Virus record (IMG/VR): IMGVR_UViG_3300034073_005389
Location: 186,001-250,000 of that record
Length of the DNA stretch: 64,000 nucleotides
Strand: one strand, 5' to 3'
Numbering within the stretch: the stretch's first letter is position 1; each line of letters starts with the position of its first letter. This document shows, piece after piece, positions 23,800 through 40,447 of the stretch. Below the pieces are notes generated by a model. That model saw only the letters and a program-made list of their open reading frames with translations, did not search any database and was not told the origin of the DNA. A program made the translations under genes and the position numbers.

Positions 23800-24393
23800 A
23801 TGATTACTTTTATTATACCTACAATAAATAGAAATACTTTAAATAGATCAATTGATTGTTTATTATCTCAATATAACCCAAATTGGAAAGCAATTGTAGC
23901 TTTTGATGGTTTACCTGCCTTACATTTTCCAGACCCTAGAATTACTTCAATTAGTGTGCCTAAAACAGGAAAATTGAACCATGCAGGTAATGTAAGAAAT
24001 ATTGCTATTTCCAAAGCTGATACAGACTGGGTAGCTTTTCTTGATGATGATGATACTATTTCTAATGATTATGTAGATAGGTTAGTAGAAGAAACAAAAG
24101 AAAATCCAGAAGCTAAATGTATTATATTTAGAATGAAAACCTCATTTGACCCCGTTGGTATTTTACCAGAACCAAATCATAATACATTTTATAAGTGCAG
24201 GGTAGGGATTAGTTTTGCAATAAAAAAAGAAATAAATATAAACTTTGAACCATCTCACATAGAAGACTTTATTATTTTAAATAAAATAAGAGAAAATGGT
24301 CATAAAATAATTATTTCTCCTTATGTTACTTACTTTGTAAGAGAAAATCCTTGCCCAATGCCAGCCTTTAAAAGAGTTAAAATTAACTATTAA
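23800..24393 (+). CDS. GT2-like glycosyltransferase (GT-A fold)
   Basis: FIIPTINR..L.RSIDCL..Q, GNVRNIAI, WVAFLDDDD, EDF. Confidence 0.85.
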   Translation: MITFIIPTINRNTLNRSIDCLLSQYNPNWKAIVAFDGLPALHFPDPRITSISVPKTGKLNHAGNVRNIAISKADTDWVAFLDDDDTISNDYVDRLVEETKENPEAKCIIFRMKTSFDPVGILPEPNHNTFYKCRVGISFAIKKEININFEPSHIEDFIILNKIRENGHKIIISPYVTYFVRENPCPMPAFKRVKINY

Positions 24394-25331
24394 TAATTTT
24401 CTCTATACCAATCAATAGTTTTAATTAAGCCTTGTGTTAAAGAAGTTTCTGCAGTAAAATTTAGTAATTGTTTTGCCCTAGAAACATCCAATAAGCGTTT
24501 TGGCTGACCATCAGATACTTCTCCAGTAAAGATAATTTGACCTTTAAAATCAGTCAATTCTGCTATTAGATAAGCTAAATCTTTAATAGAGATATCAACA
24601 CCAGTTCCTATATTAATAGGAAGTTCTGTGTCTAATTTTTGCTCTACAGCTTGTAATATGGCTTTAGCACAATCTTCTGCATAAAGAAACTCTCTAGTAG
24701 CATTTCCAGTGCCCCAACAAAATACTTGAGGTCTATTTTCTTTTACTGCTGTAACAAACTTATTAATTAAAGCAGGTATTACATGGCTATTTTCTAAATC
24801 AAAATGATCATGAATCCCGTACATATTCACTGGTATTAAATGAGCCCCTTTTGTTTGATATTGCTGCTTCATAGATTGAAACAATAACATCATTGTTTTT
24901 TTAGCGAGACCATATCCAGAATTCGTTTCTTCTGGAAAGCCTTCCCATAAACTATCTTCTTTAAATGGCGCGGGGCAGTATTTAGGATATCCACAAACAG
25001 AACCTAAAGTATAAACATATTCTACTTTATGTTCTAGACACTGTTCTAAAACATTAGAGTTCATTTGTAGATTAAATAAGGTTAAATCAGCGGGTTGTCT
25101 TTGATTTAATCCTATTCCTCCGCATTTAGCAGCAGCATGAATTACTATGTTTGGCTTAATTAAATTAAATAATTGCTCACATTCGCTTTGCTTTTCTAAG
25201 CGATAAAATTTTTTATTATAAGTTTGTCCAACAAAATACAAATCATATTTGTATTGGTAAGGCATAAATACTTTTTGAAGATTTTTGCCTAAAAATCCAG
25301 TGCCGCCAGTAATTAAAACTTTTTCTTTCAT
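24390..25331 (-). CDS. fcl: GDP-L-fucose synthase
   Basis: ITGGTGFLG, AAKCGGIG, EETNSGYGLAK, PVNMYG, SHVIPALI, WGTG..TREFLY. Confidence 0.95.
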   Translation of the reverse strand: MKEKVLITGGTGFLGKNLQKVFMPYQYKYDLYFVGQTYNKKFYRLEKQSECEQLFNLIKPNIVIHAAAKCGGIGLNQRQPADLTLFNLQMNSNVLEQCLEHKVEYVYTLGSVCGYPKYCPAPFKEDSLWEGFPEETNSGYGLAKKTMMLLFQSMKQQYQTKGAHLIPVNMYGIHDHFDLENSHVIPALINKFVTAVKENRPQVFCWGTGNATREFLYAEDCAKAILQAVEQKLDTELPINIGTGVDISIKDLAYLIAELTDFKGQIIFTGEVSDGQPKRLLDVSRAKQLLNFTAETSLTQGLIKTIDWYRENY

Positions 25332-25337
25332 AATATT

Positions 25338-26327
25338 TCAAGTATTGTCTTTAATAAGTTTTTCTTGTTTCGCTAGCTTTAAATCATGCGCGATCATTTC
25401 ATCTACAAGCATTTCAAAAGTATACTCTGGTTTCCACCCTAATTTATTTCTTATTTTAGAAGAATCTCCTTGTAAGGCATCTACTTCTGTTGGGCGCAAA
25501 TACTTAGGATCAAATTTAACATATTGTTGATAATCTAAATCTAATTTATTAAATACTAGTTCTGCAAATTCTTTTACAGAATGCATTTCGCCAATAGACA
25601 CAACATAATCATCTGGAGTATCAGATTCCAAAATTTTAATCATTGCTTTTGCATAATCTTTTGCATGACCCCAATCTCTTTTTGCTTCAAGGTTTCCTAA
25701 ATATAATTCATTTTGTAAACCTAATTTAATTCTAGTAGCTGCTCTAGTAATTTTTCGAGTAACAAATGTTTCAGCTCTACGCTCGCTCTCATGGTTAAAA
25801 CAAATTGTATTGCAAGCAAATAAATTATAAGCTTCTCTGTAATTGATGGTAGAATAATATCCTGTTGCCTTTGCTACTGCGTAAGGAGATCGTGGATGAA
25901 AAGGAGTATTCTCATTTTGTGGCGGAGGCGTAGAGCCATAAAGCTCACTTGAAGAGCTTTGTAAAAATCTAGTGTTAGGACTATATTTTCTAATAGCTTC
26001 TAGGCACCTTATAACTCCAGTACCGGTTATGTCTACTGTGTACTCTGGAATATCAAAAGAAACTCTAACATGAGATTGTGCTGCCATGTTAAAGAACATA
26101 TCTGGATTTATGTCAGACACCAAGTTGGCTATGGAAGAATAGTCTGACAAATCACCATATATTAATTTAAGATTAGGATGATCGAACAAATGATCTATTC
26201 TATCTGTATTAAAAGAAGATGATCTACGTTTTAAACCATAAACTTTATAATCTTTTTCTAAAAGAATATCAGCTAAATACGAACCAGTTTGTCCTGTGAT
26301 ACCTGTAATAATTGCTGTTTTTGACAT
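25338..26327 (-). CDS. gmd: GDP-mannose 4,6-dehydratase
   Basis: ITGITGQTGSYL, AAQSHVRVSF, PRSPYAVAK, FNHESERR, LGNLEAKRDWGHA, RPTEVD. Confidence 0.97.
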   Translation of the reverse strand: MSKTAIITGITGQTGSYLADILLEKDYKVYGLKRRSSSFNTDRIDHLFDHPNLKLIYGDLSDYSSIANLVSDINPDMFFNMAAQSHVRVSFDIPEYTVDITGTGVIRCLEAIRKYSPNTRFLQSSSSELYGSTPPPQNENTPFHPRSPYAVAKATGYYSTINYREAYNLFACNTICFNHESERRAETFVTRKITRAATRIKLGLQNELYLGNLEAKRDWGHAKDYAKAMIKILESDTPDDYVVSIGEMHSVKEFAELVFNKLDLDYQQYVKFDPKYLRPTEVDALQGDSSKIRNKLGWKPEYTFEMLVDEMIAHDLKLAKQEKLIKDNT

Positions 26328-26344: not shown

Positions 26345-27235
26345 TTATATATAATTTTTAATTAGTTTAATAGCATTTTCTCGAGAAATATTTTGTTCTG
26401 GCTGAATAATTTTAGCTTTATATTTTATATTTTTTTTACCCCATTCACCAAGAAAAAAACTATTCGAATCAGACATAGGTAGTCTTGAAAAGGTAATCAT
26501 TTTTTTATTAGGATTATTTAAATTTTCTTGAGTCATACAAAATGTAAAAGGTCCTGAAGCCCTACCAATGATCATATCACAGTTTAAACTTAAATATGAT
26601 ATCTCATTTAAATCAGATCCAGATAACTTATTGACTATATCAGAAGTAAAAAAAATATTTAAAAATTTATTTTTTTCAAAATTAATTTTTTTTGTTAAAA
26701 TAAAATTTTTATTTTTATATAAAGAGGCTAGTTCAATAACAATTGAATCTAAGTTAATATTATAAGATTGATTTGATAAAGGTTGACCATTACAAAACAA
26801 AATGCTATTTTCAATATTTTTGATATTTTTAATATTAAAAACGTTATAATTTATAGATGGAAACATCTCTAATGGGTTTTTAAAAATATTTTCAATTTTT
26901 ATTGAAAAATGATTAAATATATCTTTAAATAAAAAATACAAACAATCAAGAGTGATTTTATATTTTTTTAAATATTTACTTTTGTTAGAGCCATACCAAG
27001 TATTTATGTAAATTTTATTGTCAATTTTAGTTATAAAATCATGTGATTTTATTTTTTTATAAATTTCAGAATCATATTGAATATATGACATGTCTTTCAA
27101 TATTTCCTCACCATTTTTGTGAGAATAAATATATTTGTATTTTTTTATTCCAATATTTTCACATAATTTTTTAACAAAATTTCTAGAAATATGGATATCT
27201 CCATTTCTGCAAGGATTATAAAAAATAATGTCCAT
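26345..27235 (-). CDS. GT9-like glycosyltransferase, family A copy 1
   Basis: NGDIHISR and DLNEISYLS..CD.IIGRASGP resemble the GT9 GD and L.E...L....D..IG.DSGP motifs. Confidence 0.55.
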   Translation of the reverse strand: MDIIFYNPCRNGDIHISRNFVKKLCENIGIKKYKYIYSHKNGEEILKDMSYIQYDSEIYKKIKSHDFITKIDNKIYINTWYGSNKSKYLKKYKITLDCLYFLFKDIFNHFSIKIENIFKNPLEMFPSINYNVFNIKNIKNIENSILFCNGQPLSNQSYNINLDSIVIELASLYKNKNFILTKKINFEKNKFLNIFFTSDIVNKLSGSDLNEISYLSLNCDMIIGRASGPFTFCMTQENLNNPNKKMITFSRLPMSDSNSFFLGEWGKKNIKYKAKIIQPEQNISRENAIKLIKNYI

Positions 27236-27249: not shown

Positions 27250-27501
27250 TTATTTGCCATACATTTTAGTAGATCCTTGCTTATATAATTTTTGCAATTC
27301 TCCGGTACTACAAATATGGTTAATTTTTTCATCAATCTCTTGAATTAAGTCATTTCTTTGTTGATTGGCAATATTTGTTAATTTTGTGGCATCTGCGATT
27401 TGTTTATCAGAAGCGCTTTTATCCCTCTTTATATCTTCTGCCATCCAAATTCTAATATTTACTACTGTTAGTTTATCAATTAAATTGCCTATTGTATCCA
27501 T
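27250..27501 (-). CDS. small DUF4254-like helical protein, copy 1
   Basis: TIGNLIDKL...W..ED..R...NQQRNDLIQEID...KMY. Confidence 0.55.
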   Translation of the reverse strand: MDTIGNLIDKLTVVNIRIWMAEDIKRDKSASDKQIADATKLTNIANQQRNDLIQEIDEKINHICSTGELQKLYKQGSTKMYGK

Positions 27502-27508
27502 AATTACC

Positions 27509-28297
27509 TCAAATTTTGCATTTTAATATATCCTCTTGAGTATCATTTAACAATTTATTATAATTATAATTGTTTTTTACATCAGCCATAATCAATTTTT
27601 GATTATTTAAAATCTCAGTAGAATTTTCTTGAACAAAATAAAAAAAATCTAAATTATTTATATTGTACAAATCTTGTATAAATTCTCTTACGTTAAAAAG
27701 TCTACCAGCTCCTACAATAGAATCGCTTTTTGCCTTTATACTTTCTTCTACAATAAATTTAGTATGAACCATATCTCGATAAAAATTTAAATTATTTACT
27801 TGTATTTTCTTTTTATTTAAAATTGAATCAAATATTTTACCAAATAAAAAATATTGAGATCTATGAACTGAATTAAAATAAAATGGGTGAATAAATAAAA
27901 TTTTATTGTATCTAATGTCAAACTTTTGAAGCTCTTTTATTTTATTAAATAATAATAATTTTGATAAGATATATTCATTATTTAATGGATAAAAATTTGG
28001 AAGAGTGCTTAAAGATATTTTTCCAGATAAGTTATTCCACAACTCACATGTAGTATAACAAATTATCTTATTACAATTTTCAATTAAAGAATTAATTATT
28101 TTTAATGTATACAAATAATTAGGACTAATATAGTCAATATTATTTTCGTAAATTCTTTGCTCTGCAAAAGTAATATAAACTGAATTATATTCAGTATTTT
28201 TTAATAACTTAAAATCAATATCTCTAGAAGATATTTTAACATAGTCTTCAGGAAAATATTTTGATAATTGAGATGTATTACCAATTACTAAATTCAT
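27509..28297 (-). CDS. divergent NAD-dependent epimerase/dehydratase (extended SDR)
   Basis: Degenerate Gly motif VIGNTSQLS, TTCE, YILSK (YxxxK), YRDMVH, VGAG. Confidence 0.6.
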   Translation of the reverse strand: MNLVIGNTSQLSKYFPEDYVKISSRDIDFKLLKNTEYNSVYITFAEQRIYENNIDYISPNYLYTLKIINSLIENCNKIICYTTCELWNNLSGKISLSTLPNFYPLNNEYILSKLLLFNKIKELQKFDIRYNKILFIHPFYFNSVHRSQYFLFGKIFDSILNKKKIQVNNLNFYRDMVHTKFIVEESIKAKSDSIVGAGRLFNVREFIQDLYNINNLDFFYFVQENSTEILNNQKLIMADVKNNYNYNKLLNDTQEDILKCKI

Positions 28298-28899
28298 TTT
28301 TTTATTTTAAAAATATAATTATATTTTATTTTATTTACTAACTCATAACCAATAGACTTCATATATGTCTCATATTCTGGTAAATATAAATAATTTTCTA
28401 ACAAAATTATTTCAGGCTGATATTTTTTAGTATCAAATCCTTTCATTACTTCCAATTCCCATCCCTCTGTATCAATTGATACAAAATCAACTTTTTCTAC
28501 TTTTATTTTATCTAATAAAGTATTTAATTTTAAAATTTGAACTTTTATTTCTTTAATTTTATGTGATCCTTTTAAAGGATATTTAAGATCAATTGCAGAA
28601 TAACTAATACCATTTGCATGTTGCGGCCATCCAGTCTCTACAATTTTAAATGAAGATAATTTTTCTTCATTAGCGCAAGCAAATTGGTAAATTTCATTTC
28701 CGGCTTTCTTATGGCTTTCAACAAATTTAGGATTAGGATCGATGCAAATACATCTCCAACCATGATCTCTAAAATGCTTTGACATGCTAAAAAAATCAAC
28801 TGGACCAGCACCAACTTCAACCATAACTTTTTTTTCTAAAAAATTAGGAAAAAAATTTTCTCTGATATATTTATCTGTTTCTAATTCGGCGTAATACAT
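28294..28899 (-). CDS. FkbM family methyltransferase
   Basis: VEVGAG, IDPNP, DFVSIDTEGWELEVMKG. Confidence 0.88.
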   Translation of the reverse strand: MYYAELETDKYIRENFFPNFLEKKVMVEVGAGPVDFFSMSKHFRDHGWRCICIDPNPKFVESHKKAGNEIYQFACANEEKLSSFKIVETGWPQHANGISYSAIDLKYPLKGSHKIKEIKVQILKLNTLLDKIKVEKVDFVSIDTEGWELEVMKGFDTKKYQPEIILLENYLYLPEYETYMKSIGYELVNKIKYNYIFKIKK

Positions 28900-28905: not shown

Positions 28906-30123
28906 CTAAAAACTTATAATTTCAAAATTGGGGCAAGGAACAATAAACTTACCACCATTGGCTAGATAATCTATTTCTCTATGATAAAATTCATTTATAA
29001 AATGCCAGGGTAGTACTAATAAATAGTCTGGCTTTTTTTTACGCATCTCATCTTCAGAATATATAGGAATATTAGTTCCAACAGTTTTTAAACCAAATTT
29101 ATAAACACTTCTTTCAGCAATTCCATCTATTAAAGTATGATCTAATCCAAAATACTGTAACAAAGTATTGCCTTTAGTAGATGCGCCATATCCCCAAATT
29201 ACTTTTCCCTTTTCTTTTTCTTTTTTTATAAAATTTACAGTTTTTTCTTTTAATTTATTAATTTTAATAAAAAAATTTTTCCAAGTATCAATAGAATTTA
29301 AATTTAATTTTTCTTCGTGTAAAAGTAAAGATTTGATTCTAAAATCACAAACATCTCTATAAGGTTGAGTGGCAAAAGTTTTTTCGTTTCCAACATCTTT
29401 CATTACATAAACTCTAAATGATCCGCCATTTGTATCGTTTAAATGACAATCAACAATTTTAAATTTATTTTTTTCTAAAAGATTTTTTAAATTAAATAAA
29501 GAATAATAATAAATATGTTCATGGCAAATATTATCAAACGCTAGTTGAGATAACATTAATGGAGTGTAACTTAATTGCAGCACCCATAAACCATCATCAT
29601 CTAAAACATCATATATATCTTTGACAAAAGAGTTGGGATCTTCTAAATCGTAAAACATAGCAATTGATGTAATAATTTTGGGTTTTAGATTACCGTATTT
29701 GCTATTTTTAAAATTAAAAGAAGTAAAATAATTTTGAATTATTACATCAGCATGTTTTGATGACTCTTTTACGAAAGATTCATCGGCAGGGTCTATGCCA
29801 ATTTTTATTAAATAATCTGGTAAAAAACTTAACAAAGTACCATCATTGCATGCAATATCTAACCAAACATCATTTTCTTTTAATTTTTTTACTTTTAAAA
29901 TAGATTCAGTAATGTCTTTTAATTCTTCTTTCATTGAATTATTTGTACCAGACCTATACCAATATTTGCCATACATTGTTTCTAGCGGTGCTGATTTTTC
30001 TAACCTAACCAACCCATCCTCAAGCATAACAAGTTTCATTTCAACTTTGTCACCTCTAGGCAGCTCATCATTTTTAATGAAATCAGAAACATAAAGGCTT
30101 CCCAAACTAAATAAATCTTTCAT
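28906..30123 (-). CDS. NDP-hexose C-methyltransferase (TcaB9/EryBIII-like)
   Basis: YWYRSG, LDIACNDGTLL, SIAMFYD, CHEHIYYYS, GGSFRV, GYGASTKGNTLL, PDYLLVLPWHF. Confidence 0.88.
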   Translation of the reverse strand: MKDLFSLGSLYVSDFIKNDELPRGDKVEMKLVMLEDGLVRLEKSAPLETMYGKYWYRSGTNNSMKEELKDITESILKVKKLKENDVWLDIACNDGTLLSFLPDYLIKIGIDPADESFVKESSKHADVIIQNYFTSFNFKNSKYGNLKPKIITSIAMFYDLEDPNSFVKDIYDVLDDDGLWVLQLSYTPLMLSQLAFDNICHEHIYYYSLFNLKNLLEKNKFKIVDCHLNDTNGGSFRVYVMKDVGNEKTFATQPYRDVCDFRIKSLLLHEEKLNLNSIDTWKNFFIKINKLKEKTVNFIKKEKEKGKVIWGYGASTKGNTLLQYFGLDHTLIDGIAERSVYKFGLKTVGTNIPIYSEDEMRKKKPDYLLVLPWHFINEFYHREIDYLANGGKFIVPCPNFEIISF

Positions 30124-30125: not shown

Positions 30126-30758
30126 TTAACCTCTAATATAAAAATCATTTACTTCTACTCTTTTATCTTTTTTCCAGCCCTTTTCTTTCAAAAAAGATTC
30201 AATAAAAGGCTCATTAAAATTATTCTCTATTACCATAAGTTTTGTATTATATTTATTTACATCAAAAGATTTTAGTACATCTAATTCATTTCCTTCAGTA
30301 TCTATAGAGATAAAATCTATTACTTTATGATTAAAGTGATTTGTTATGCACCAATCTAATCTTCTTGATTTTACTTTAATATCTTTTTTTTGTGGCTGTA
30401 ATCCTAATTTTTCATGACTAAGAATCAGTCTGTCATCAATTTCTAATCCGCTAATAGAAGATTGGTTTGCGGTTTTCATGGTAACAACAGTGAAATTAAC
30501 ATCATCTATATTTTTACTAGAAACAGCATAGTTAATAGCATTTTTTCTGTTCTTTTTTAGAGAGATAAAGTAATGTGGATTTGGCTCAATGCATAGCGCA
30601 TTCCACCCATTTTTTTCAAAATGCAATGTATTAGAAATAAAAATTCCGTCTACAGCACCAACTTCAATACAATTACCTGTTTTTTGATTGGGAAAATAAT
30701 TTTTTATTATTTTGTCAATTGGAGGATTAAATTGACCATGAAATTTAGTATATATCAT
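30126..30758 (-). CDS. FkbM family methyltransferase
   Basis: IEVGAVDG..SNT..FE..GW..LCIEPNP, DFISIDTEGNE. Confidence 0.88.
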   Translation of the reverse strand: MIYTKFHGQFNPPIDKIIKNYFPNQKTGNCIEVGAVDGIFISNTLHFEKNGWNALCIEPNPHYFISLKKNRKNAINYAVSSKNIDDVNFTVVTMKTANQSSISGLEIDDRLILSHEKLGLQPQKKDIKVKSRRLDWCITNHFNHKVIDFISIDTEGNELDVLKSFDVNKYNTKLMVIENNFNEPFIESFLKEKGWKKDKRVEVNDFYIRG

Positions 30759-33112: not shown

Positions 33113-33521
33113 TCTTGCTCCATTTCATTATAAATAATGATTCTTTTTCCTCTATAACAAAGAAATTATATTTTTTATATAAATTAATTGCTTTATAATT
33201 ATCTTTATCTACAGTTAGATAGATGTCTATGATGCCTAACACTTTAGATATATTAATCAGTATATCAATGCAGTAAGATCCTAAATGCTTACCAATATAA
33301 CTATCAGAAACTAAAATGCCCAGCCAAATCTTATTATTTTCTTCTTCTAAATGACAATAAGCTGCTGGAATATTATTTTCTAATATAATAAAAGACTGCA
33401 AGTGAGATTGCGTAATCTCTAGACGCCTAGTATTAAAATATCTAAATTTTTTAATACCCTCTTTAGAAGAGTTTAACAAACTAGACAGTAACTGCACATC
33501 AGTTCTTACAATCTTTCTCAT
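33105..33521 (-). CDS. GNAT family N-acetyltransferase
   Basis: WLGILV..SYIGKHLG, IYLTVDKDNYKAINLYKKYNF. Confidence 0.88.
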   Translation of the reverse strand: MRKIVRTDVQLLSSLLNSSKEGIKKFRYFNTRRLEITQSHLQSFIILENNIPAAYCHLEEENNKIWLGILVSDSYIGKHLGSYCIDILINISKVLGIIDIYLTVDKDNYKAINLYKKYNFFVIEEKESLFIMKWSKNV

Positions 33522-33524: not shown

Positions 33525-34088
33525 TTATTTTCTTTTTAAGACGGCAAGCCTGTCAACAACTTCTACTAAAACCCACTTATCATATTTATTGCCTTCTAAA
33601 TACTTTTTAATATAAGTGCCTCTACCAAAAGTCCAATCATGGCACAATACATATGTACCTGTTTTTGAAAAATCTGATTCTATTTTTTTAAAATGAAATA
33701 AATTTTCAGATTCTTTCTTCTGAAAGAAAGATCCTTCTCCATAGTCTTTACCAGGAACAACCCAAGCAGAGTTTACTAATTTTTCATCACCTGCATCTAA
33801 AAAGTACATATCAGCAATAATTTTTCTGTCAAAAAATTTTAAAGAATCTTCTAAGTTCATTTCTACAATTTTCTTAGTAACATAATCGTTTAAAATTTTT
33901 TTAGCAGAATCAAAATACTCTTTACCTAATTCATAGGTAATTAATTTGCCTTTTTTATTATGCAATAAAGCTTTACAAAACTCTAAACCACTTGTAGCAG
34001 ATTTGCCTGTACCAAATTCAACTATCACATTTGGCTTCAATTTTGTTACATAATTAAATATTGCTTTCTTTTCTATTCCATTTGGCAT
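33525..34088 (-). CDS. class I SAM-dependent methyltransferase
   Basis: IVEFGTG, LITYEL, DSL, DMYFLDAG, LCHDW. Confidence 0.75.
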   Translation of the reverse strand: MPNGIEKKAIFNYVTKLKPNVIVEFGTGKSATSGLEFCKALLHNKKGKLITYELGKEYFDSAKKILNDYVTKKIVEMNLEDSLKFFDRKIIADMYFLDAGDEKLVNSAWVVPGKDYGEGSFFQKKESENLFHFKKIESDFSKTGTYVLCHDWTFGRGTYIKKYLEGNKYDKWVLVEVVDRLAVLKRK

Positions 34089-34101: not shown

Positions 34102-34938
34102 TTATTTCTTATTTAAATTTTTTAACAGTCTTTCTTTATTAATGTAATCTGGTAGATTTACACTAAGTTTTTTAATTCCTTTTTTCACTTCTTTGTTTGG
34201 ATGCATTCCAATATCATAACCATAGACTTGATTAGGTTTTACGTTATTTAAATTTACATTCCAACACTGAGTTAAAAAATCTTTTTTATTAGGCAAATAA
34301 GTTAGTTTGTATTTAACTCTACTATCTCCTACATAAGCAAAATGAAAATACCTAGACTCATTATCAAAATATGTTGGAGGATATTGCTTGGTAATGGTGC
34401 AATGACCATAAATATTTCCCTTTTTATGCCTAGCAATTCTACCCCACCCTAATGTCATGGTATCTTGCTTAAGGTCAGCGTTGCAAAAAATATGATCTGC
34501 GTCTTTAAAAAAGACATAATGAGGAAAGTCATATGATTGATGCTTGTCATTTGATGCAAAAAAATCATCTACTTTATCAAATGTTTCTTGAGTAAAGAAT
34601 TCATCAGCATCAGTGCACCAAAAGACATTCATATCATCTTTAACATATTGAGAGCCACGAACAAACATTTGTTTTTTTCCAGCCACTGACATACCAATAT
34701 CTGTTCTTACTCCAGATAAATCTTTATTATCTAATATAATAATCTTTTTTTCTGGATCTGGATATTTTTTTAAAAAATCTAGTGAGCCATCTGTAGAATT
34801 AGAATATGGCGTTTTAGTAACACATAAATCATAAAATATAAGTTGATCAAAATTTTTATACAAAAATGGTAACTTTTCTACTAGAAAAGGATATTCATTA
34901 TAACAAATTTGGAAATGGCAATGTTTTAATTTTTTCAT
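34102..34938 (-). CDS. GT2-like glycosyltransferase
   Basis: CYNEYPFL, STDGS..FL, WCTDADEFF (DxD), HFAY. Confidence 0.7.
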   Translation of the reverse strand: MKKLKHCHFQICYNEYPFLVEKLPFLYKNFDQLIFYDLCVTKTPYSNSTDGSLDFLKKYPDPEKKIIILDNKDLSGVRTDIGMSVAGKKQMFVRGSQYVKDDMNVFWCTDADEFFTQETFDKVDDFFASNDKHQSYDFPHYVFFKDADHIFCNADLKQDTMTLGWGRIARHKKGNIYGHCTITKQYPPTYFDNESRYFHFAYVGDSRVKYKLTYLPNKKDFLTQCWNVNLNNVKPNQVYGYDIGMHPNKEVKKGIKKLSVNLPDYINKERLLKNLNKK

Positions 34939-34943: not shown

Positions 34944-35507
34944 TTATCTTAAATAAATTGGTTTTAAATGTAAATATGGTCCTGGTACACGATCTTTAGG
35001 CTTATAATCTCTAATTTTAGAGGTATGAAAATGATAAGTTTTGATGGTTAATGAGGGATTAGATATTTTATATCCTGATTCTTTGATCTCATGCGCAACC
35101 CTATTATCACAACCAGGTCTCCCTAAGAAATAATTGCCCACTATTTTTTTTAATGAACCTTTAAAAATCCAAGTATCTTGAGAAAAAACTTTGTCCCAAA
35201 ATTTAATATTAGATGGCGAAAGATAATCCCATCTAGTTAAAGCATACGCTTCCTCATGATCCATTTTTAATGTTAAATTAATTGTATCATCAAAAAATAT
35301 ATCAGAGTTGCATATGATGTTTATGTCATCAGGACCGGTATTCTGATTAATTTTATCAAAATAAAAATCAAAAGTTAATCTATTTTGATGATTAATTAAA
35401 ATTACATTTAAATGTTTATTTTGTAAATTTTTATTTTTACAAAAATCTATTTCATAAGCTCTTTTAGGATCTGGATGTTTAAAATAATTATAATATAAAT
35501 TGATCAT
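34944..35507 (-). CDS. short GT-A-like protein, family B copy 1
   Basis: CNSDIFFD, ALTRWD, SQDTWIF, LG.PGCDNR, KTYH.H.S; paralog of 36461. Confidence 0.55.
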   Translation of the reverse strand: MINLYYNYFKHPDPKRAYEIDFCKNKNLQNKHLNVILINHQNRLTFDFYFDKINQNTGPDDINIICNSDIFFDDTINLTLKMDHEEAYALTRWDYLSPSNIKFWDKVFSQDTWIFKGSLKKIVGNYFLGRPGCDNRVAHEIKESGYKISNPSLTIKTYHFHTSKIRDYKPKDRVPGPYLHLKPIYLR

Positions 35508-35528: not shown

Positions 35529-36458
35529 TTATTTTTTTATATAATTATTAATTATATTTAAAACTGCAGAATCATTTGTCTCTTTAGACTCAACAATTCT
35601 GGCAGGATATTTTATATTTTTAAGACCCCAATCACCCAGCCAAAAATTCTTACCTCCACTTAACCCAGAAAAAGTCAATAATGTCTTGTTTGGATTTAAA
35701 TAATTTTCTTTACACATAGAAAAAGTGAATGCGCCTGATGCTCTACCAATAACCAAATCGCATTTTAAACTTAAATATGAGGTTTCGTTTAAATCAGAAC
35801 CTTTTGTCTTTTTTATAATATCTGAGGAATAAACCACATTAGGATATGCCCTCCTATCAAAATTAGGATCTTTTTCTTTAAAAGTTAAAATCCATTTTCT
35901 ATTTGGATGCATTTTGGCTAATTTTAAAATAATAGGTGTAAAATTAAAATTTTTAGCCTGACCAGATCTAGCGTGATTATTACAAACTAGAACAGGAGAT
36001 ACTTTATTTTGAGAGTGAAAAGTATCAATATTTTTAATAAATGTAGGGTGCAAATTTTTATAATTAATTGCAGGAAAAAAATAAAAAGGGTCTTTTGATA
36101 TATCTTCTAATTTTAGACCCAATCCCGCATAAATATCTTGAAATATAAAATACAAAGTATCAAAGTTAAATCCATTAGCTTTATTTGAATACTTATAATT
36201 ATTTACTCCATACCAAGTACCAGCATAAAAAGTATTATTTTTAACTATGTGAACATTTTTATTGTCTGCCTGTTTTAACAAATTAGCATCAAATTTTAAA
36301 CCTTTTATATCTTCTAATAGTTTGGGGTCATTTTTATGAGAAAAATATATCTCATATTTATTTCCTAAATGCTTAACAACTTCAGAAATAAAAGTTCTGG
36401 AGATATGAATATCTCCATTATTAAAATGATTAAAGAAAACAATTTTATTATAGCTCAT
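35529..36458 (-). CDS. GT9-like glycosyltransferase, family A copy 3
   Basis: NGDIHISR, DLNETSYLSLKCDLVIGRASG. Confidence 0.55.
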   Translation of the reverse strand: MSYNKIVFFNHFNNGDIHISRTFISEVVKHLGNKYEIYFSHKNDPKLLEDIKGLKFDANLLKQADNKNVHIVKNNTFYAGTWYGVNNYKYSNKANGFNFDTLYFIFQDIYAGLGLKLEDISKDPFYFFPAINYKNLHPTFIKNIDTFHSQNKVSPVLVCNNHARSGQAKNFNFTPIILKLAKMHPNRKWILTFKEKDPNFDRRAYPNVVYSSDIIKKTKGSDLNETSYLSLKCDLVIGRASGAFTFSMCKENYLNPNKTLLTFSGLSGGKNFWLGDWGLKNIKYPARIVESKETNDSAVLNIINNYIKK

Positions 36459-36460: not shown

Positions 36461-37021
36461 TTATGTTGGAGAAATTTGTTTATAAGGTCCAGGAACAGTG
36501 TCATGCTTTTTGCTATAATTTCTTATATTAGAAGAATGTACATGATATGTTTTTATTGTTTTACTAGGATTAGATAATCTATATCCCGCTTTTACTATTT
36601 CATAAGCGATCCTATTATCACATCCAGGCATACCTAGAAATATATCGCCATATAAATTAGATCTAATTTTACCTTTAAAAATCCAAGTATCTTGGCTATC
36701 AGGTCTGTTAAACAATTCGGCAGAGCCGTTTGTTTTTAAATCCCATCTGGATAATGCATAACAATCATCTACCGCCATATTCTTACAATTTAAGATTGTA
36801 TCGTCTAAATAAATATCTGAATTACAAACTATATTAATATCATTTGGAAGCGTAACACTATTTATTTTTTTAAAATAATAAGAATATGTTAATCTATCTT
36901 GACTTTCTATTACAATAGTATTTATGTTTTTATTAGATAAATTTTTATTTAAACAAAAATCAATTTCTTTCTGTCTAGCTGGGTTTTTATCTTTATAATA
37001 ATTATAAATTAGATTAATCAT
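36461..37021 (-). CDS. short GT-A-like protein, family B copy 2
   Basis: CNSDIYLD, ALSRWD, SQDTWIF, LGMPGCDNR. Confidence 0.55.
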   Translation of the reverse strand: MINLIYNYYKDKNPARQKEIDFCLNKNLSNKNINTIVIESQDRLTYSYYFKKINSVTLPNDINIVCNSDIYLDDTILNCKNMAVDDCYALSRWDLKTNGSAELFNRPDSQDTWIFKGKIRSNLYGDIFLGMPGCDNRIAYEIVKAGYRLSNPSKTIKTYHVHSSNIRNYSKKHDTVPGPYKQISPT

Positions 37022-37983
37022 AGTAAGTGACTTAAATTTAACATGTTAATTAATTCTAGTATTTTAGAAGTAAAAGTATGCTCCATTAATACTTTTCTAT
37101 GACCATTTTTACCAACTTCTAATGCTTTATCTGGATTATTTTTACAAAACTGTATGATAGAGTGTATATCCTCTATAGATTTAGCAATAAATAGATCCTG
37201 ACCATCTACAAAATAACTATCATAATTAGGGAAGTCCCAAGAAATAACTGGTCTGCCTGAAGCTAAGCACATTAATAATCTATCAGAAAAATAATGTGCA
37301 ACCTCATTAAAATGACTAATGCTTAGTACGCAAACACTAGAGTTATAAACCTCGTTAGTTTGAGGCATGGGTATAAATTTGGAAGGGACATTATAATTCC
37401 TTCCAAACAAACCAAATCTGTCTTTATATCTAGTATATAAGCTATGCGCAACTTGTGATCTTAATGATGACGATGGAAAGTTTCCATAATGGTTAGCTGC
37501 AAATGAAATATCGTATTTAAATGATGAATAATTTTTAGGAAAATATAATTTAGGATCATATCCTATTTGCCAATAACAAGGATTCTTGCAGCCGCTATTT
37601 TTATATAAATCTAATTGACCCGTACTAGATATCAAAGAGTAATCGCATCCTTGAGATATTTTACAAAATCCGCTATCAGCATATGCCCTACAATCTCCGG
37701 TCCAGTTAGTAATAACTACTCCAGGAGACAATTTTCTAGCTTCATTTAAAACTTCTACACTAAGAAGCCCGCTAAATTGGAGCTGCATGTGAATCAATTT
37801 TGGTTGAAAAGTTCTAACTACCTTTAAAAACCCTTCATTTACACTTTCTCTTCTTTTAGAATTTAACCAAATTCTATTAAAATCATAAATTTCTAATTTA
37901 ACTCCAGCATTGTGCCAAGCATCATATGTAGCTTGCTGCACTGTATTATTATCATTTAATGGTAAATATAAAACTTTTAACAT
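37018..37983 (-). CDS. GT-B glycosyltransferase (CgeB / Glyco_trans_1_2-like)
   Basis: WTGD, YDISF.AN, YFSDRL..CLASG, GH.KV..EHT. Confidence 0.8.
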   Translation of the reverse strand: MLKVLYLPLNDNNTVQQATYDAWHNAGVKLEIYDFNRIWLNSKRRESVNEGFLKVVRTFQPKLIHMQLQFSGLLSVEVLNEARKLSPGVVITNWTGDCRAYADSGFCKISQGCDYSLISSTGQLDLYKNSGCKNPCYWQIGYDPKLYFPKNYSSFKYDISFAANHYGNFPSSSLRSQVAHSLYTRYKDRFGLFGRNYNVPSKFIPMPQTNEVYNSSVCVLSISHFNEVAHYFSDRLLMCLASGRPVISWDFPNYDSYFVDGQDLFIAKSIEDIHSIIQFCKNNPDKALEVGKNGHRKVLMEHTFTSKILELINMLNLSHLL

Positions 37984-37984
37984 T

Positions 37985-40447
37985 TTATTTTCCTAATAAA
38001 ACTAACATTTTTTTATATAATTCTTCATTATAAGAAGGATTATAATTAAAAATTAATTTTTCATTATTTTTAAATTTAGAAAATGCAAAATCAATCGCTT
38101 CTTCATCAATTTTAAGTTTATTATCAATCATATGATTTCTCGCAAAGATCATATTTGAATCGTCTTTTAAGTAAAAGACGTTATTAGTAATAATATTTAA
38201 ATGATGCGCTTGAACAAAATTAACAAGACCAGACTCATAATTAGTTTCAAGAGAAAAATCAATAATTAATTTTGAGCCATAAAGCAAGCTAATAATTTTA
38301 TCATAGTCTTCATATTCGGAATATCTAATAACATTAGATGGTAATTTTAATCTAGACCCGACAACAACTAAATTTTTTAGATTTAACTGCTTAAAACATT
38401 TTACCACGGAAGGAGTAAATTCTTCGTTTTTTTCAAAATACAAAGCATAATCTTCTATTTTAGAAAAAGGAGAAGTATTTAAATTAAACCATAATTTAGG
38501 CAGTCTAGTAATTTTTTTACCAGGGAATTTATCTATTAATTTATTAAAATTATAAAAAGATGGAGTAATGATGTGGTTACATTTATCCAGCGCTTGAATC
38601 ATAGATTCTGAAAATTCAATCTCAGATTCTTCTAAAAAGAGATTTTTGGCTGGTAGTAATCTATCTCCAGACCCTATAACTAAATCTAGTTCATTAGATT
38701 TAGGAAATGATTTTAAATTTTTTACACAATTATGTACTTTTAATTGTGGGAAAAAAGGCTGGATCTTACGAACCCATTGTCTAGAAGAGAAATTAACTGG
38801 TAATACTGTAAAGTTTACATCCCAAGTATTAGTTGGAGAGAATCTTTCTGGTTCAAAAATACTATTAAATTTAGAAACATCTTTAACCCAACTAGTTTTT
38901 AGTGTAATCTCTTCTTTTATAGGAGGACTAGAGACTATTAGTCTATTTTCTATATTATCTATATTATCTGACTGCCCTGTAAGCACAGGGATAGAATTCT
39001 TCTTAAATTTATTATTTATTTCTTTAATAACAAATTCTCGTTTAGAGCAAACCCAAAATCTTCTTAAATTATTATTTTGATTTTTAGAATCTAAAACTTT
39101 CCAATCATAAAGGTGACTGTCATGGTTGAGATCTGGATGATCTAATCTAGTAAAAGGTAAACCTGCATCTGAAAAAATTTTTTCTATTTTAGCAGCTGTA
39201 GGTCGGCTGCCCACACCACAAAAAGATAAAGATGGATTAGTTTTATCTTCTGGAATAGTATAATTAATATTTGGATTATTAGAGTCGCATACAGCCATTT
39301 CTAATATAAGAGTGTCTTTTGTTTTATTACACAAATCTTTTAAATGCGATTCGTAGTTAGCAACATGATGTAATGTATCAATACTTAAAACAATATCAAA
39401 TTTAGTCGAAATATGTAGCGGTGACTCAAAATTTAATTTAACAGTTTTAATATTAGGATATTTTTTATTAATAATATTGATATTTTCTTGCCTGGCATCT
39501 GCAGCTATTACCGCTGATCCTAGCCTAGATAAAGAGGCTCCTACGTCGCCATTACCAGCACCAGCATCTAAAACATGCTTTCTAAAAAAGAATTTAGGAG
39601 TAAATAAATTTAATATAAATTTTAATTTATGTTCTGAATGTTTATTCATGAATAAATTTGACATATTCGCCTGCTGTAGTTGCTGTTGAATTTCAAGCCT
39701 AAAATCGGGAGCGTCATTAATATGAATATTTGTATTGCTTAATACTGGTAAAGTATTGTTGACAACAGGCTGAGAGATAGGTAATGGTAAGTAATTAAAA
39801 TCAGAAAGATTTGCAGACTCATCTTTTACACAAAACCATAATCTTCTTTTATAAAAGTCACAACTGCTATCATTTTTTTCTAACCAATCATAAACATATG
39901 AACTAGAGTTAAATTTGTTACTATTTATTCTAGTAAATTTCATTCCACACTGAGATAAAATTTTTTCAATAGCAGCAGTAGTAGGTCTAGTGCCAGTGCC
40001 ATTTACTGATAAGTCGAAAATAGACTTATTTTCTTTAATAATAACTACTTTAGCGTCATCATGATGATCGCAAACAGCTGTTTCTAATACTAGATTTTTG
40101 GCAATACGACATACTTGCTGCAAATGTGACTGATAATCTGATACGTGGCATAACAATCCTAAATCTAAAACTAAATCAAATTTTTCATTTTGAAATGGAA
40201 AGCCCCTATCTAAATCGTGTTTAATTGTTTTAATTCCAGGATATCGTTTATTGGCAACTTGTAAATGCTCATTTCTAGCGTCTAAAGCAATGACAGACGC
40301 GCCCAATCGATGTAAAGGACCGCTTAAGTCTGCATATCCACAGCCTAAGTCTAGTATTTTTTTGCCAGACATAAAAGAAGGACCATAATGGTCCATTATT
40401 CCTTTTAGTCTTTTTTGGTTCCAATCAAAATACTTGCCAGTAAACAC
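37985..40447 (-). CDS. multidomain protein: two tandem class I SAM methyltransferases plus degenerate C-terminal GT-like region
   Basis: ILDLGCG...LDAR and VLDAGAG...ADAR, each followed by LE.AVCD...G.G.RPT..YDW...RR.W; GTG start with GAGG SD. Confidence 0.8.
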   Translation of the reverse strand: MFTGKYFDWNQKRLKGIMDHYGPSFMSGKKILDLGCGYADLSGPLHRLGASVIALDARNEHLQVANKRYPGIKTIKHDLDRGFPFQNEKFDLVLDLGLLCHVSDYQSHLQQVCRIAKNLVLETAVCDHHDDAKVVIIKENKSIFDLSVNGTGTRPTTAAIEKILSQCGMKFTRINSNKFNSSSYVYDWLEKNDSSCDFYKRRLWFCVKDESANLSDFNYLPLPISQPVVNNTLPVLSNTNIHINDAPDFRLEIQQQLQQANMSNLFMNKHSEHKLKFILNLFTPKFFFRKHVLDAGAGNGDVGASLSRLGSAVIAADARQENINIINKKYPNIKTVKLNFESPLHISTKFDIVLSIDTLHHVANYESHLKDLCNKTKDTLILEMAVCDSNNPNINYTIPEDKTNPSLSFCGVGSRPTAAKIEKIFSDAGLPFTRLDHPDLNHDSHLYDWKVLDSKNQNNNLRRFWVCSKREFVIKEINNKFKKNSIPVLTGQSDNIDNIENRLIVSSPPIKEEITLKTSWVKDVSKFNSIFEPERFSPTNTWDVNFTVLPVNFSSRQWVRKIQPFFPQLKVHNCVKNLKSFPKSNELDLVIGSGDRLLPAKNLFLEESEIEFSESMIQALDKCNHIITPSFYNFNKLIDKFPGKKITRLPKLWFNLNTSPFSKIEDYALYFEKNEEFTPSVVKCFKQLNLKNLVVVGSRLKLPSNVIRYSEYEDYDKIISLLYGSKLIIDFSLETNYESGLVNFVQAHHLNIITNNVFYLKDDSNMIFARNHMIDNKLKIDEEAIDFAFSKFKNNEKLIFNYNPSYNEELYKKMLVLLGK

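What the first reader, a model, noticed from the sequence alone, without database searches (positions are those of the whole stretch)
23800..40447. 17-kb all-soluble glycan island: probable phage virion glycosylation system paralleling giant viruses
Seen: 20 contiguous genes: Gmd, Fcl, divergent SDR, PLP aminotransferase, GNAT, sugar C-methyltransferase, two FkbM and three more MTase domains, about eight GT-like proteins. There is no Wzx, Wzy, ABC exporter, priming transferase or evident TM protein. Known: O-antigen conversion needs membrane enzymes, whereas chloroviruses and mimiviruses encode soluble fucose/rhamnose/amino-sugar pathways, GTs and MTases to glycosylate their own particles. Inference: this phage builds a complex methylated oligosaccharide in the cytoplasm on capsid/tail proteins (or on DNA), for receptor binding, camouflage or protease resistance.
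Basis: partly seen in the sequence, partly recalled or inferred. Interest (0 to 1): 0.82.

Follow-up and report, generated by a model that had tools for sequence, protein, structure and literature searches.

The report
Soluble glycan-building island in a jumbo phage
A 361-kb freshwater jumbo phage carries a real 17-kb block of 20 membrane-free genes that make unusual activated sugars, link them and methylate them; it most likely sugar-coats the phage's own particle, but changing the host's surface instead is not excluded.

Summary
Window 23800-40447 holds 20 tightly packed ORFs:
- Gmd, an Fcl-like enzyme and a short SDR
- a perosamine-synthase-like aminotransferase and a GNAT
- a sugar 3-C-methyltransferase, two FkbM and three further methyltransferase domains
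- two DUF4254 proteins
- eight glycosyltransferase-like proteins, five of which (two orphan families) needed structure prediction to be recognised.

No island gene has a transmembrane segment. The window has no polytopic membrane ORF.

The island is not a misassembly. Its codon usage matches the rest of the phage. An independent study's contig bridges its left edge. A syntenic core recurs in about 19 other large-phage loci (contigs up to 481 kb).

New evidence on function:
- The core glycosyltransferase pair (a 186-aa GT-A plus a Glyco_trans_1_2 GT-B) occurs in more than 500 viral loci.
- In 46 of 61 small-phage loci the GT-A gene, mostly with its GT-B partner, lies 2-5 kb from the major head protein, protease, portal or tape-measure genes.
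- It is sometimes fused into one ORF or to a methyltransferase.
- It has 32%-identical relatives in cedratvirus and pithovirus.

This favours virion-protein glycosylation (about 0.5). Remodelling of the host envelope glycan, the usual reading of such clusters in cyanophages, remains a serious rival (about 0.3). DNA glycosylation is unlikely. I file it as a new variant of a known kind.

The parts
23800..24393 (+). g1: small GT2-family glycosyltransferase (197 aa), convergent with the rest of the island
   Evidence: PF00535 at 4.8e-14; phrog_14775 glycosyltransferase; no TM segment
24390..25331 (-). g2: GDP-L-fucose synthase-like epimerase/reductase (Fcl/GMER-like)
   Evidence: Best NCBIfam NF047922 at 246 bits, below the 500-bit cutoff; best PDB 1bws/1bsv at 1e-54 over the full length
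25338..26327 (-). g3: GDP-mannose 4,6-dehydratase (Gmd)
   Evidence: PF16363 at 1e-125; TIGR01472 at 445.6 bits, above the 415-bit cutoff
26345..27235 (-). g4: family-A orphan glycosyltransferase (GT-B fold, GT9-like), paralogue of g10 and g17
   Evidence: 54% and 41% identity to g10 and g17; fold taken from the g17 model; no Pfam or PHROG match
27250..27501 (-). g5: DUF4254 protein, role unknown
   Evidence: PF14063 at 1.3e-9
27509..28297 (-). g6: short divergent SDR (epimerase/dehydratase/reductase-like), candidate 4-ketoreductase
   Evidence: Protein-atlas score 0.99 to viral clusters carrying PF01370/PF16363; weak BLASTP match to Gmd. Lead only
28294..28899 (-). g7: FkbM-family methyltransferase
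   Evidence: PF05050 at 4.5e-18
28906..30123 (-). g8: NDP-hexose 3-C-methyltransferase-like enzyme
   Evidence: PF08484 at 9.7e-45 plus PF13489; best PDB 4rv9 mycarose 3-C-methyltransferase at 3e-36, then TcaB9
30126..30758 (-). g9: FkbM-family methyltransferase, paralogue of g7
   Evidence: PF05050 at 5.5e-20; 32% identity to g7
30764..31672 (-). g10: family-A orphan glycosyltransferase (GT-B, GT9-like)
31692..32789 (-). g11: PLP sugar aminotransferase, closest to GDP-perosamine synthase
   Evidence: PF01041 at 7e-60; best PDB 3bn1/3dr4 perosamine synthetase at 1e-41; best NCBIfam the LegC family, below its cutoff
32804..33112 (-). g12: DUF4254-like small protein, conserved in the large-phage relatives
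   Evidence: Weak PF14063 match; paralogue of g5; 47-72% identical copies in relatives
33105..33521 (-). g13: GNAT acetyltransferase, candidate amino-sugar N-acetyltransferase
   Evidence: PF00583 at 2.5e-9
33525..34088 (-). g14: class I SAM methyltransferase (Methyltransf_24/O-methyltransferase-like)
   Evidence: Protein-atlas structure match, TM 0.75-0.79 to O-methyltransferase clusters. Lead only
34102..34938 (-). g15: probable GT-A (GT2/CgtA-like) glycosyltransferase
   Evidence: Protein-atlas features 0.97-0.98 to viral clusters, some carrying PF00535/PF06306. Lead only; no Pfam or PHROG match
34944..35507 (-). g16: family-B minimal GT-A glycosyltransferase, paralogue of g18
   Evidence: 55% identity to g18; fold from the g18 model
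35529..36458 (-). g17: family-A GT-B glycosyltransferase; the copy orthologous to the single copy in relatives
   Evidence: AF2 pLDDT 94.3; Foldseek to GT9 3tov/1psw/WaaC and to TibC, E 3e-8 to 5e-5; 32 homologues, none with a Pfam domain
36461..37021 (-). g18: family-B minimal GT-A glycosyltransferase (186 aa); core of a widespread viral module
   Evidence: AF2 pLDDT 96.9; GT-A hits in PDB; TM 0.88-0.92 to phage, Cedratvirus and Pithovirus proteins; more than 355 protein clusters and more than 522 IMG/VR loci
37018..37983 (-). g19: GT-B glycosyltransferase (Glyco_trans_1_2), partner of family B
   Evidence: PF13524 at 6.5e-17; co-occurs with family B in most viral loci; fused to family B in L072 and to a methyltransferase in L010
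37985..40447 (-). g20: methyltransferase + methyltransferase + orphan C-terminal domain (about residues 470-820)
   Evidence: Two class I methyltransferase domains. The C-terminal domain has 143 representative relatives, mostly placed C-terminally in longer proteins. It has no Pfam or PDB match and only a weak profile match to the g19 family, E 0.009
18714..19439 (-). RmlA-like sugar-1-phosphate nucleotidylyltransferase, outside the stated interval; possibly a second donor pathway
   Evidence: PF00483 at 3.7e-46; best NCBIfam is glucose-1-phosphate thymidylyltransferase, below its cutoff
17604..18464 (-). RmlD-like reductase, outside the stated interval
   Evidence: PF04321 at 6.3e-17; TIGR01214 at 51.7 bits, below its cutoff

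Best explanation
The island is a phage-encoded glycosylation factory that works entirely in the cytoplasm.

Enzyme identities supported by homology:
- Gmd converts host GDP-mannose to GDP-4-keto-6-deoxymannose.
- The Fcl-like enzyme makes GDP-L-fucose or a closely related 6-deoxyhexose.
- The perosamine-synthase-like aminotransferase plus the GNAT make an N-acetylated 4-amino-4,6-dideoxyhexose.
- The 3-C-methyltransferase, together with the short SDR, makes a branched C-methyl deoxysugar.
- An RmlA-like and RmlD-like pair 5 kb away may feed a second donor pathway.

Inferred steps:
- Eight soluble glycosyltransferases (three GT9-like GT-B, two minimal GT-A, one Glyco_trans_1_2 GT-B, one GT2 and one GT-A-like) assemble a hetero-oligosaccharide directly on a soluble acceptor.
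- Five methyltransferase domains (two FkbM, g14 and two in g20) decorate it.
- The acceptor is most likely virion structural protein (capsid and/or tail). This would give each phage lineage its own sugar coat, for shielding, stability or adhesion.

The conserved core is the methyltransferase protein, the Glyco_trans_1_2 GT, the family-B GT-A and the family-A GT-B. In this phage the island grew by duplication: family A three copies, family B two, FkbM two, DUF4254 two, and a doubled methyltransferase domain.
For: - Enzyme inventory.
- GT folds.
- No TM segments in the island and no polytopic ORF in the window.
- 0 of 54 viral family-B loci (993 kb) have an ORF with six or more TM-like segments nearby, against 16 of 47 bacterial loci (Fisher p = 9e-7).
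- Genuine phage DNA: codon-usage r = 0.96 with the other window genes. Syntenic islands with the same Thg1 and other flanks occur in independent large-phage contigs. An independent study's contig spans 22037-24906.
- The family-B gene, with a g19-type GT in most loci, occurs without the rest of the island in small-phage contigs. In 46 of 61 of these, family B lies 2-5 kb from homologues of the major head protein, head protease, portal or tape measure.
- That small-phage cassette also carries GT4, DUF5672 and pyruvyl-transferase genes.
- Fusions link the parts: family B with g19 in L072, methyltransferase with g19 in L010.
- Family B has 32%-identical relatives at TM 0.88-0.89 in Cedratvirus and Pithovirus, one in a 742-aa protein named a methyltransferase. 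These viruses replicate in eukaryotic cells, which by established knowledge lack the bacterial undecaprenyl-linked pathways.
Against: - No acceptor was identified. No structural gene lies in the 64-kb window; the neighbours are replication, translation and lysis genes.
- The structural-module association comes from small phages of only about three or four lineages, not from the large-phage clade itself.
- Bacterial family-B homologues sit in polysaccharide-type loci beside Gmd/Fcl, GT2 and polytopic membrane proteins. The family can therefore work in lipid-linked pathways.
- GT9-like folds are typical of LPS core heptosyltransferases as well as of the protein heptosyltransferase TibC.
- Phage loci rarely encode polytopic membrane proteins in any case, so the 0/54 contrast is weak evidence.
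- About 300 kb of the genome was not examined.
Confidence: 0.5

Rival explanations
1. Host envelope remodelling. The soluble phage enzymes make new donor sugars and add or extend glycan on the host's own lipid-linked intermediates (undecaprenyl-PP-linked O-antigen or capsule, or lipid A-core) at the inner face of the membrane. The host's priming transferase and exporter do the rest. This would change the cell surface during a long infection, to block superinfection or to stop progeny re-adsorbing.
For: - This is the standing interpretation of comparable clusters: 24 'LPS' genes in P-SSM2 (PMC1079782), 'capsular polysaccharide modification systems' of jumbo phages (PMC7824862), and S-SCSM2R with 13 GTs (PMC12801897).
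- Bacterial family-B homologues lie beside Gmd/Fcl, GT2, SDR and polytopic membrane proteins.
- Family A is GT9-like, the fold of the LPS heptosyltransferases WaaC and WaaF.
- By established knowledge, non-initiating O-antigen GTs lack TM segments, so 'all soluble' does not exclude this.
- The island lies among non-structural genes.
Against: - No initiating transferase, flippase, polymerase, ligase or ABC exporter was found in the island, in the window, or in any of 54 related viral loci.
- The core GT pair lies next to capsid genes in small phages. That position is hard to explain for a host-surface function.
- Close homologues occur in giant viruses of eukaryotes.
- The core is vertically conserved across a lytic-looking large-phage clade.
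Confidence: 0.3
2. Another soluble acceptor. The glycan is built on a non-virion target, for example host or phage cytoplasmic proteins, or a small molecule (a glycosylated secondary metabolite).
For: - The acceptor is unknown and the flanking genes are non-structural.
- Jumbo cyanophages are reported to carry sugar-derived secondary-metabolite clusters (PMC7824862).
- The orphan C-terminal domain of g20 and the DUF4254 proteins are unexplained.
Against: - There is no scaffold-forming enzyme (PKS, NRPS, cyclase) in the island.
- Eight GTs are far more than known small-molecule pathways need.
- The structural-module context of the core pair points to virion proteins.
Confidence: 0.12
3. DNA hypermodification. 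The sugars are transferred to modified bases of the phage DNA to evade restriction.
For: - Phages do glycosylate DNA with diverse glycans (Pyle 2024 as cited in PMC12619734; PMC13326640, listed).
- DNA methyltransferases and an adenylosuccinate-synthetase (PurA/PurZ-family) gene lie nearby.
Against: - No thymidylate-synthase-like hydroxymethylase appeared among the roughly 70 window ORFs scanned.
- Fold matches are to GT9 and generic GT-A enzymes, not to DNA glucosyltransferases.
- By my own knowledge, eight GTs plus amino-, C-methyl- and O-methyl-sugar chemistry far exceed any known DNA sugar modification.
- The core pair sits by capsid genes in small phages.
Confidence: 0.05
4. Artefact. The block is a bacterial polysaccharide locus misassembled into a phage contig.
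For: The island's GC is slightly lower than the flanks (0.267 against 0.30-0.32), with three genes near 0.20. Some relatives were binned into bacterial MAGs.
Against: - Codon-usage r = 0.96 with the other window genes.
- The same gene order and the same flanks recur in about 19 independent large-phage loci.
- The same sequence occurs in several assemblies and samples.
- An independent study's 2,869-bp contig bridges Thg1, the unknown ORF, g1 and g2.
Confidence: 0.01

Closest known systems
Mycobacteriophage virion glycosylation genes (cluster O/F phages; Freeman et al. 2023)
   Same: Phage-encoded soluble glycosyltransferases in tandem with an O-methyltransferase. [quoted passage not shown] The core here is likewise a methyltransferase followed by GTs.
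   Different: No sequence relationship was shown. The mycobacteriophage sets are 3-4 genes without nucleotide-sugar pathways; here there are 20 genes with three donor-sugar branches. Glycosylation here is not demonstrated, and the host is an unknown aquatic bacterium.
Chlorovirus and giant-virus autonomous glycosylation machinery (PBCV-1 GMD/GMER, A064R GT-GT-MT; Megavirinae fibril glycans)
   Same: A virus-encoded Gmd plus Fcl-type pair, amino-sugar plus N-acetyltransferase chemistry, and soluble GT and methyltransferase domains including fusions (reviews PMC5408694 and PMC9614988, listed). Family B has relatives at TM 0.88-0.89 and 32% identity in Cedratvirus and Pithovirus. PBCV-1 A64R and Mimivirus R655 are weak fold matches.
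   Different: Different virus realm and host domain. Only one family shows real homology. The attachment site is unknown. The GT9-like family A and the g20 C-terminal domain were not shown to have giant-virus counterparts.
Cyanophage and jumbo-phage 'LPS/capsular polysaccharide' clusters (P-SSM2, S-SCSM1, S-SCSM2R, S-SKS1)
   Same: Large clusters of sugar epimerases, dehydratases and many GTs in big aquatic phages, polymorphic between relatives, function untested. S-SKS1 carries a family-B homologue (SWZG_00036) inside a roughly 15-kb sugar cluster.
   Different: Different phage clade. The core families here (A, B, g19 and the g20 C-terminal domain) have no PHROG family and, except g19, no Pfam family. 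Methylation is heavy (six methyltransferase domains). The literature reads those clusters as host-surface modification; the context found here points to virions.
Bacterial ABC-transporter-dependent O-antigen assembly with a methyl cap (E. coli O8/O9a WbdA-D type; from my own knowledge)
   Same: The glycan is fully assembled by soluble or peripheral GTs on the cytoplasmic side from GDP-sugars, then modified by a multidomain methyltransferase protein.
   Different: That pathway needs WecA priming, the Wzm/Wzt exporter and the WaaL ligase. None is encoded in the island or the window.
GT9 heptosyltransferases (WaaC/WaaF) and the protein heptosyltransferase TibC
   Same: Family A's predicted fold matches them best (E 3e-8 to 5e-5, TM about 0.5).
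   Different: Sequence identity is 8-13%. There is no Pfam GT9 hit and no heptose pathway in the island. Donor and acceptor are unknown, so this is a fold-level resemblance only.

Membership tests
GDP-L-fucose de novo pathway (Gmd + Fcl) | GDP-mannose 4,6-dehydratase scoring above the curated equivalog cutoff | tested here: met
   TIGR01472 at 445.6 bits against a 415-bit cutoff
GDP-L-fucose de novo pathway (Gmd + Fcl) | GDP-L-fucose synthase scoring above the curated equivalog cutoff | tested here: inconclusive
   NF047922 is the best family but scores 246 bits against a 500-bit cutoff. The full-length PDB match to E. coli GMER is 1e-54. The product stereochemistry is not determinable here.
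Phage virion glycosylation system (mycobacteriophage type) | Phage-encoded glycosyltransferases with an associated methyltransferase | tested here: met
Phage virion glycosylation system (mycobacteriophage type) | Glycan demonstrated on capsid or tail subunits | not testable with these tools
   Needs virions and mass spectrometry. The only support is indirect: the core GT pair sits beside the major head protein gene in small phages.
Phage virion glycosylation system (mycobacteriophage type) | Sequence homology to the mycobacteriophage GTs | not tested
   No mycobacteriophage record appeared in the tblastn searches with family A, family B or g19 at E <= 1e-5.
Giant-virus autonomous glycosylation machinery | Virus-encoded nucleotide-sugar synthesis plus soluble GT and methyltransferase enzymes, independent of membrane carriers | tested here: met
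Giant-virus autonomous glycosylation machinery | Homology of the GTs to giant-virus GTs | tested here: met
   Met for family B only: Cedratvirus kamchatka at TM 0.88 and 32% identity, Pithovirus LCPAC403/404 at TM 0.86-0.89. Not shown for the other families.
Wzx/Wzy- or ABC-dependent O-antigen/capsule locus; lysogenic O-antigen conversion | Initiating phosphoglycosyl transferase, flippase/polymerase or ABC exporter encoded with the GTs | tested here: not met
   No TM segment in the island and no polytopic ORF in the window. 0 of 54 related viral loci have one. The rest of the genome was not examined.
Wzx/Wzy- or ABC-dependent O-antigen/capsule locus; lysogenic O-antigen conversion | NDP-sugar pathway genes plus several GTs in one operon-like block | tested here: met
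Phage DNA sugar hypermodification | Base hydroxymethylase (thymidylate-synthase-like) and DNA-specific GT linked in the genome | tested here: not met
   None among the roughly 70 window ORFs scanned. GT folds match GT9 and generic GT-A. Tested for the window only.
CAZy GT9 (heptosyltransferases) | Sequence-level membership (Pfam Glyco_transf_9) and ADP-heptose donor supply | tested here: not met
   No Pfam hit for g4, g10 or g17. Only fold similarity, at 8-13% identity. No heptose genes in the island.

The most novel reading that the evidence does not exclude
The 186-aa GT-A (family B) and its Glyco_trans_1_2 partner, with or without a methyltransferase, are the core of a widespread and so far undescribed virion-glycosylation system of aquatic phages.

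- It is found in more than 500 IMG/VR loci, usually beside the capsid genes.
- It is homologous to enzymes of cedratviruses and pithoviruses.
- Large-phage lineages have expanded it into hypervariable 11-20 kb islands. Each lineage would then carry its own coat of methylated deoxy-, amino- and C-methyl-sugars on capsid or tail proteins, assembled wholly in the cytoplasm without a lipid carrier.
Probability: 0.4. Interest if true: 0.8.

Novelty: new variant of a known kind. Interest (0 to 1): 0.55.

Why it matters
Large sugar-gene clusters in big aquatic phages have been known since 2005. They have been read, without tests, as devices for altering the host's LPS. Virion glycosylation has been shown only in mycobacteriophages among the papers found here.

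If this island glycosylates the particle, three things follow:
- Sugar-coated virions would be common in freshwater and marine phages, which bears on adsorption, decay, grazing and recognition by defences.
- Phages and giant viruses would share a carrier-free glycosylation toolkit.
- Three orphan protein families (A, B and the g20 C-terminal domain) would gain a function.

The small-phage cassettes, a capsid gene followed by 3-6 glycan genes, offer a compact system that could be tested by co-expression.

Tried and rejected
- Near-identity DNA searches of the island and of a flank against 50,697 phage records found nothing. tblastn with g20 and g19 also found nothing. No cultured close relative exists.
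- The g20 C-terminal domain stays unassigned. There was no PDB hit by sequence or profile and no Pfam domain in ten relatives. hhalign against families A and B was negative, and against g19 only weak at E 0.009.
- PDB sequence searches for g6, g14, g19 and g1 were empty or at chance level.
- The promoter and terminator scan gave counts no higher than shuffled sequence, so no transcription-unit boundaries could be drawn.
- Read laying returned mostly short contig pieces. Only run X5 gave a long bridging piece. The many 'joints' have 19-25-nt sides and are treated as noise.
- PurZ against PurA could not be settled: PHROG 1211 matches, but the best tblastn hits are ordinary adenylosuccinate synthetases.
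- Literature: Freeman 2023 is not held. The huge-phage paper does not mention glycosylation. Nothing was found on S-SKS1 glycosyltransferases or on DUF4254. The 'moraphage' lineage (PMC12619734) has core GTs but was not shown to be this clade.
- I considered a stop-codon read-through or a split gene inside the island and rejected it. All 20 ORFs are intact under code 11 and match full-length homologues.

Full report
WHAT THE WINDOW IS

The window is part of IMGVR_UViG_3300034073_005389, a 361,490-bp viral contig. By my arithmetic the window corresponds to contig positions of about 186-250 kb. It is a low-GC (about 30%) jumbo phage.

Around the island lie these genes:
- rIIA, a NAD-dependent DNA ligase, a Thg1-like enzyme, an endolysin and an FtsK-like ATPase;
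- a type IA topoisomerase and an MT-A70 methyltransferase;
- IF3 and two ClpP genes;
- a tmRNA gene.

The nearest record by rIIA is an uncultured 462-kb phage at 37% identity. Near-identity DNA searches against phage records found nothing. The same sequence occurs in subsurface and freshwater metagenomes from several studies.

THE OBSERVATION

Nineteen are co-directional on the - strand with gaps of -8 to +21 bp. A small GT2 gene converges on them from the + strand.

Assignments by Pfam, NCBIfam and PDB sequence searches:
- Gmd, above the curated equivalog cutoff.
- An Fcl-like enzyme. GDP-fucose synthase is its best family but scores below the cutoff. The match to E. coli GMER is 1e-54 over the full length.
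- A DegT aminotransferase whose best solved relatives are GDP-perosamine synthases.
- A GNAT.
- A C-methyltransferase closest to mycarose 3-C-methyltransferase and TcaB9.
- Two FkbM methyltransferases.
- A protein with two class I methyltransferase domains and a 350-residue orphan C-terminal domain.
- A Glyco_trans_1_2 GT.
- Two DUF4254 proteins.

The remaining seven ORFs had no Pfam hit that passes its curated cutoff.
- All-against-all BLASTP groups five of them into two paralogous families: family A (g4, g10, g17) and family B (g16, g18).
- AlphaFold models built on alignments of homologues were confident: pLDDT 94 for family A and 97 for family B.
- Family A is a GT-B fold, closest to the GT9 heptosyltransferases and to the protein heptosyltransferase TibC.
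- Family B is a compact GT-A fold.
- Protein-atlas leads make g15 GT-A-like, g6 a short SDR and g14 an O-methyltransferase-like enzyme.

A Kyte-Doolittle scan finds no transmembrane segment in any island gene and no polytopic ORF anywhere in the window.

Two sugar-nucleotide genes lie outside the stated interval: RmlA-like at 18714-19439 and RmlD-like at 17604-18464.

NOT AN ARTEFACT

- Codon usage in the island correlates at r = 0.96 with the other window genes.
- Four IMG/VR contigs of 198-359 kb carry a syntenic island of about 11 kb.
- A 423-kb contig in GenBank (GCA_902725685.1) has the same order and even the same Thg1 and lysin flanks. It carries an ATP-grasp, a HAD and a UDP-glucose dehydrogenase as extras.
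- About 19 large-phage loci share the core order: methyltransferase protein, g19-type GT, family B, family A.
- Family A also occurs in the 636-kb and 735-kb phage records.
- In an independent freshwater study, a 2,869-bp contig at 97% identity bridges Thg1, the unknown ORF, g1 and g2.

Compared with its relatives, this phage's island has grown by duplication. Family A has three copies, family B two, FkbM two and DUF4254 two, and the methyltransferase domain is doubled. It has also gained the sub-block holding the C-methyltransferase, the short SDR and the FkbM genes. Accessory content differs from relative to relative. That hypervariability is typical of loci that specify a surface structure.

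WHAT BEARS ON THE ACCEPTOR

1. Distribution. Family B is abundant: more than 355 protein clusters and more than 522 IMG/VR loci. In small-phage contigs it occurs without the rest of the island, together with a g19-type GT in most of them.

2. Position in small phages.
   - PHROG annotation of three lineages places the module inside the morphogenesis region.
   - In L056 it lies between the head protease/capsid-like protein and the portal.
   - In L059 it lies between the major head protein and the connector, tail and tape-measure genes.
   - In L026 it lies between the tape-measure region and the portal.
   - With those structural proteins as queries, 46 of 61 small-phage loci have family B 2-5 kb from a capsid, protease, portal or tape-measure homologue.
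   - These cassettes also carry a conserved 246-aa protein, a GT4, a DUF5672 protein, or a pyruvyl transferase.

3. Fusions.
   - Family B is fused to the g19-type GT in L072.
   - A methyltransferase domain is fused to the g19-type GT in L010.

4. Giant-virus relatives. A search of predicted viral structures finds family-B relatives at TM 0.88-0.89 and 32% identity in Cedratvirus kamchatka and Pithovirus LCPAC403. Another, at 23% identity, lies in a 742-aa Pithovirus LCPAC404 protein named a methyltransferase. These viruses replicate in eukaryotic cells, which by established knowledge have no bacterial lipid-carrier pathways.

5. Bacterial homologues.
   - They are 30-40% identical and often lie beside SDR, GT2 or Gmd/Fcl genes.
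   - 16 of 47 bacterial loci have an ORF with six or more TM-like segments within 8 kb, against 0 of 54 viral loci (p = 9e-7).
   - This cuts both ways. The family can serve lipid-linked pathways in cells, but phages never bring the membrane parts along. Phages seldom encode polytopic proteins in any case.

MECHANISM PROPOSED

Supported by homology:
- Host GDP-mannose is converted by Gmd to GDP-4-keto-6-deoxymannose.
- That intermediate feeds a fucose branch (g2) and a perosamine-like branch that is then N-acetylated (g11, g13).
- A 3-C-methyl branch uses g8, with g6 as the candidate ketoreductase.
- The RmlA-like and RmlD-like pair may supply a dTDP-sugar.

Inferred:
- Eight soluble GTs build an oligosaccharide on a soluble acceptor.
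- The FkbM enzymes, g14 and the g20 methyltransferase domains methylate it.
- The acceptor is virion protein.

My confidence is about 0.5. The main rival, at about 0.3, is the conventional reading of such clusters as host LPS or capsule remodelling using the host's priming and export enzymes (PMC1079782, PMC7824862, PMC12801897). The remaining options:
- DNA glycosylation (about 0.05) lacks any supporting gene in the window.
- A non-virion soluble acceptor or a small molecule is at about 0.12.
- Misassembly is excluded.

COMPARISON WITH WHAT IS KNOWN, AND NOVELTY

The kind of system is known:
- big aquatic phages carry sugar clusters;
- mycobacteriophages glycosylate their capsid and tail tube using an O-methyltransferase plus tandem GTs;
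- giant viruses encode autonomous glycosylation machinery (reviews listed).

What is new here:
- a conserved core made largely of unannotated families, with no PHROG family for family A, family B, g19, g15, g6, g14 or DUF4254;
- no Pfam family for family A, family B or the g20 C-terminal domain;
- the recurrence of that core across a large-phage clade whose founding paper does not mention glycosylation;
- the link between the core GT pair and capsid genes in hundreds of uncultured small phages;
- the homology to cedratvirus and pithovirus enzymes.

I file it as a new variant of a known kind, with interest 0.55.

LIMITS

- No acceptor, glycan or expression data exist.
- The assignments of g6, g14 and g15 rest on protein-atlas leads.
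- The small-phage context comes from three or four lineages.
- About 300 kb of the genome was not examined.
- TM prediction was a hydropathy scan, not a trained predictor.

Noticed in passing
window 21749-22102 (-): Phage-encoded tmRNA gene (ARAGORN; tag peptide ANDNAFAPMALAA). It fills the apparent coding gap between the endolysin and the Thg1-like gene.
   Followed up: no
window 19444-19980 (-), 11430-12017 (-) and 12024-12608 (-): A translation initiation factor IF3 homologue and two tandem ClpP protease subunits encoded by the phage.
   Followed up: no
window 43318-44457 (-): Adenylosuccinate-synthetase homologue of 379 aa, next to rIIA. It matches PHROG 1211 (PurZ-type annotation), but the best tblastn hits are ordinary PurA at 35-38% identity. 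Whether the phage makes 2-aminoadenine DNA is open.
   Followed up: partly
window 22365-23147 (-); L007 4802-5545 and 18650-19438: A Thg1-like (tRNA-His guanylyltransferase family) gene flanks the island here and in the relatives. In the 423-kb relative, two Thg1 genes bracket the island.
   Followed up: partly
window 41146-41361 (-) and 41645-41965 (-): According to precomputed Pfam hits on the identical JGI scaffold, a 71-aa product carries PF26761 (Acb5) and a 106-aa product is a thioredoxin. Both lie just beyond the island's right end.
   Followed up: no
window 46828-48489 (-): A 553-aa ORF matching an HNH-endonuclease PHROG over two stretches. It lies in the most GC-rich part of the window (0.35-0.38 against about 0.30).
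   Followed up: no
L056 10543-11025: An HNH/NUMOD1 homing-endonuclease-like ORF is inserted between the family-B GT and the g19-type GT of a small phage.
   Followed up: no
L036 12421-14583 and 14590-17100: In a 209-kb relative, the Gmd-like and Fcl-like regions lie inside much longer ORFs (720 and 836 aa), which suggests multidomain fusion enzymes.
   Followed up: no
L090 and L091 (genome contigs): Short contigs carrying the large-phage island genes at 52-57% identity are binned into Bacteroidales and Saccharimonadia MAGs. This is probably phage DNA mis-binned, or possibly a hint about the host.
   Followed up: no
window 26345-27235, 27509-28297 and 30764-31672: Three island genes (two family-A copies and the short SDR) have a GC content of only about 0.20, well below the island mean of 0.267.
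   Followed up: no
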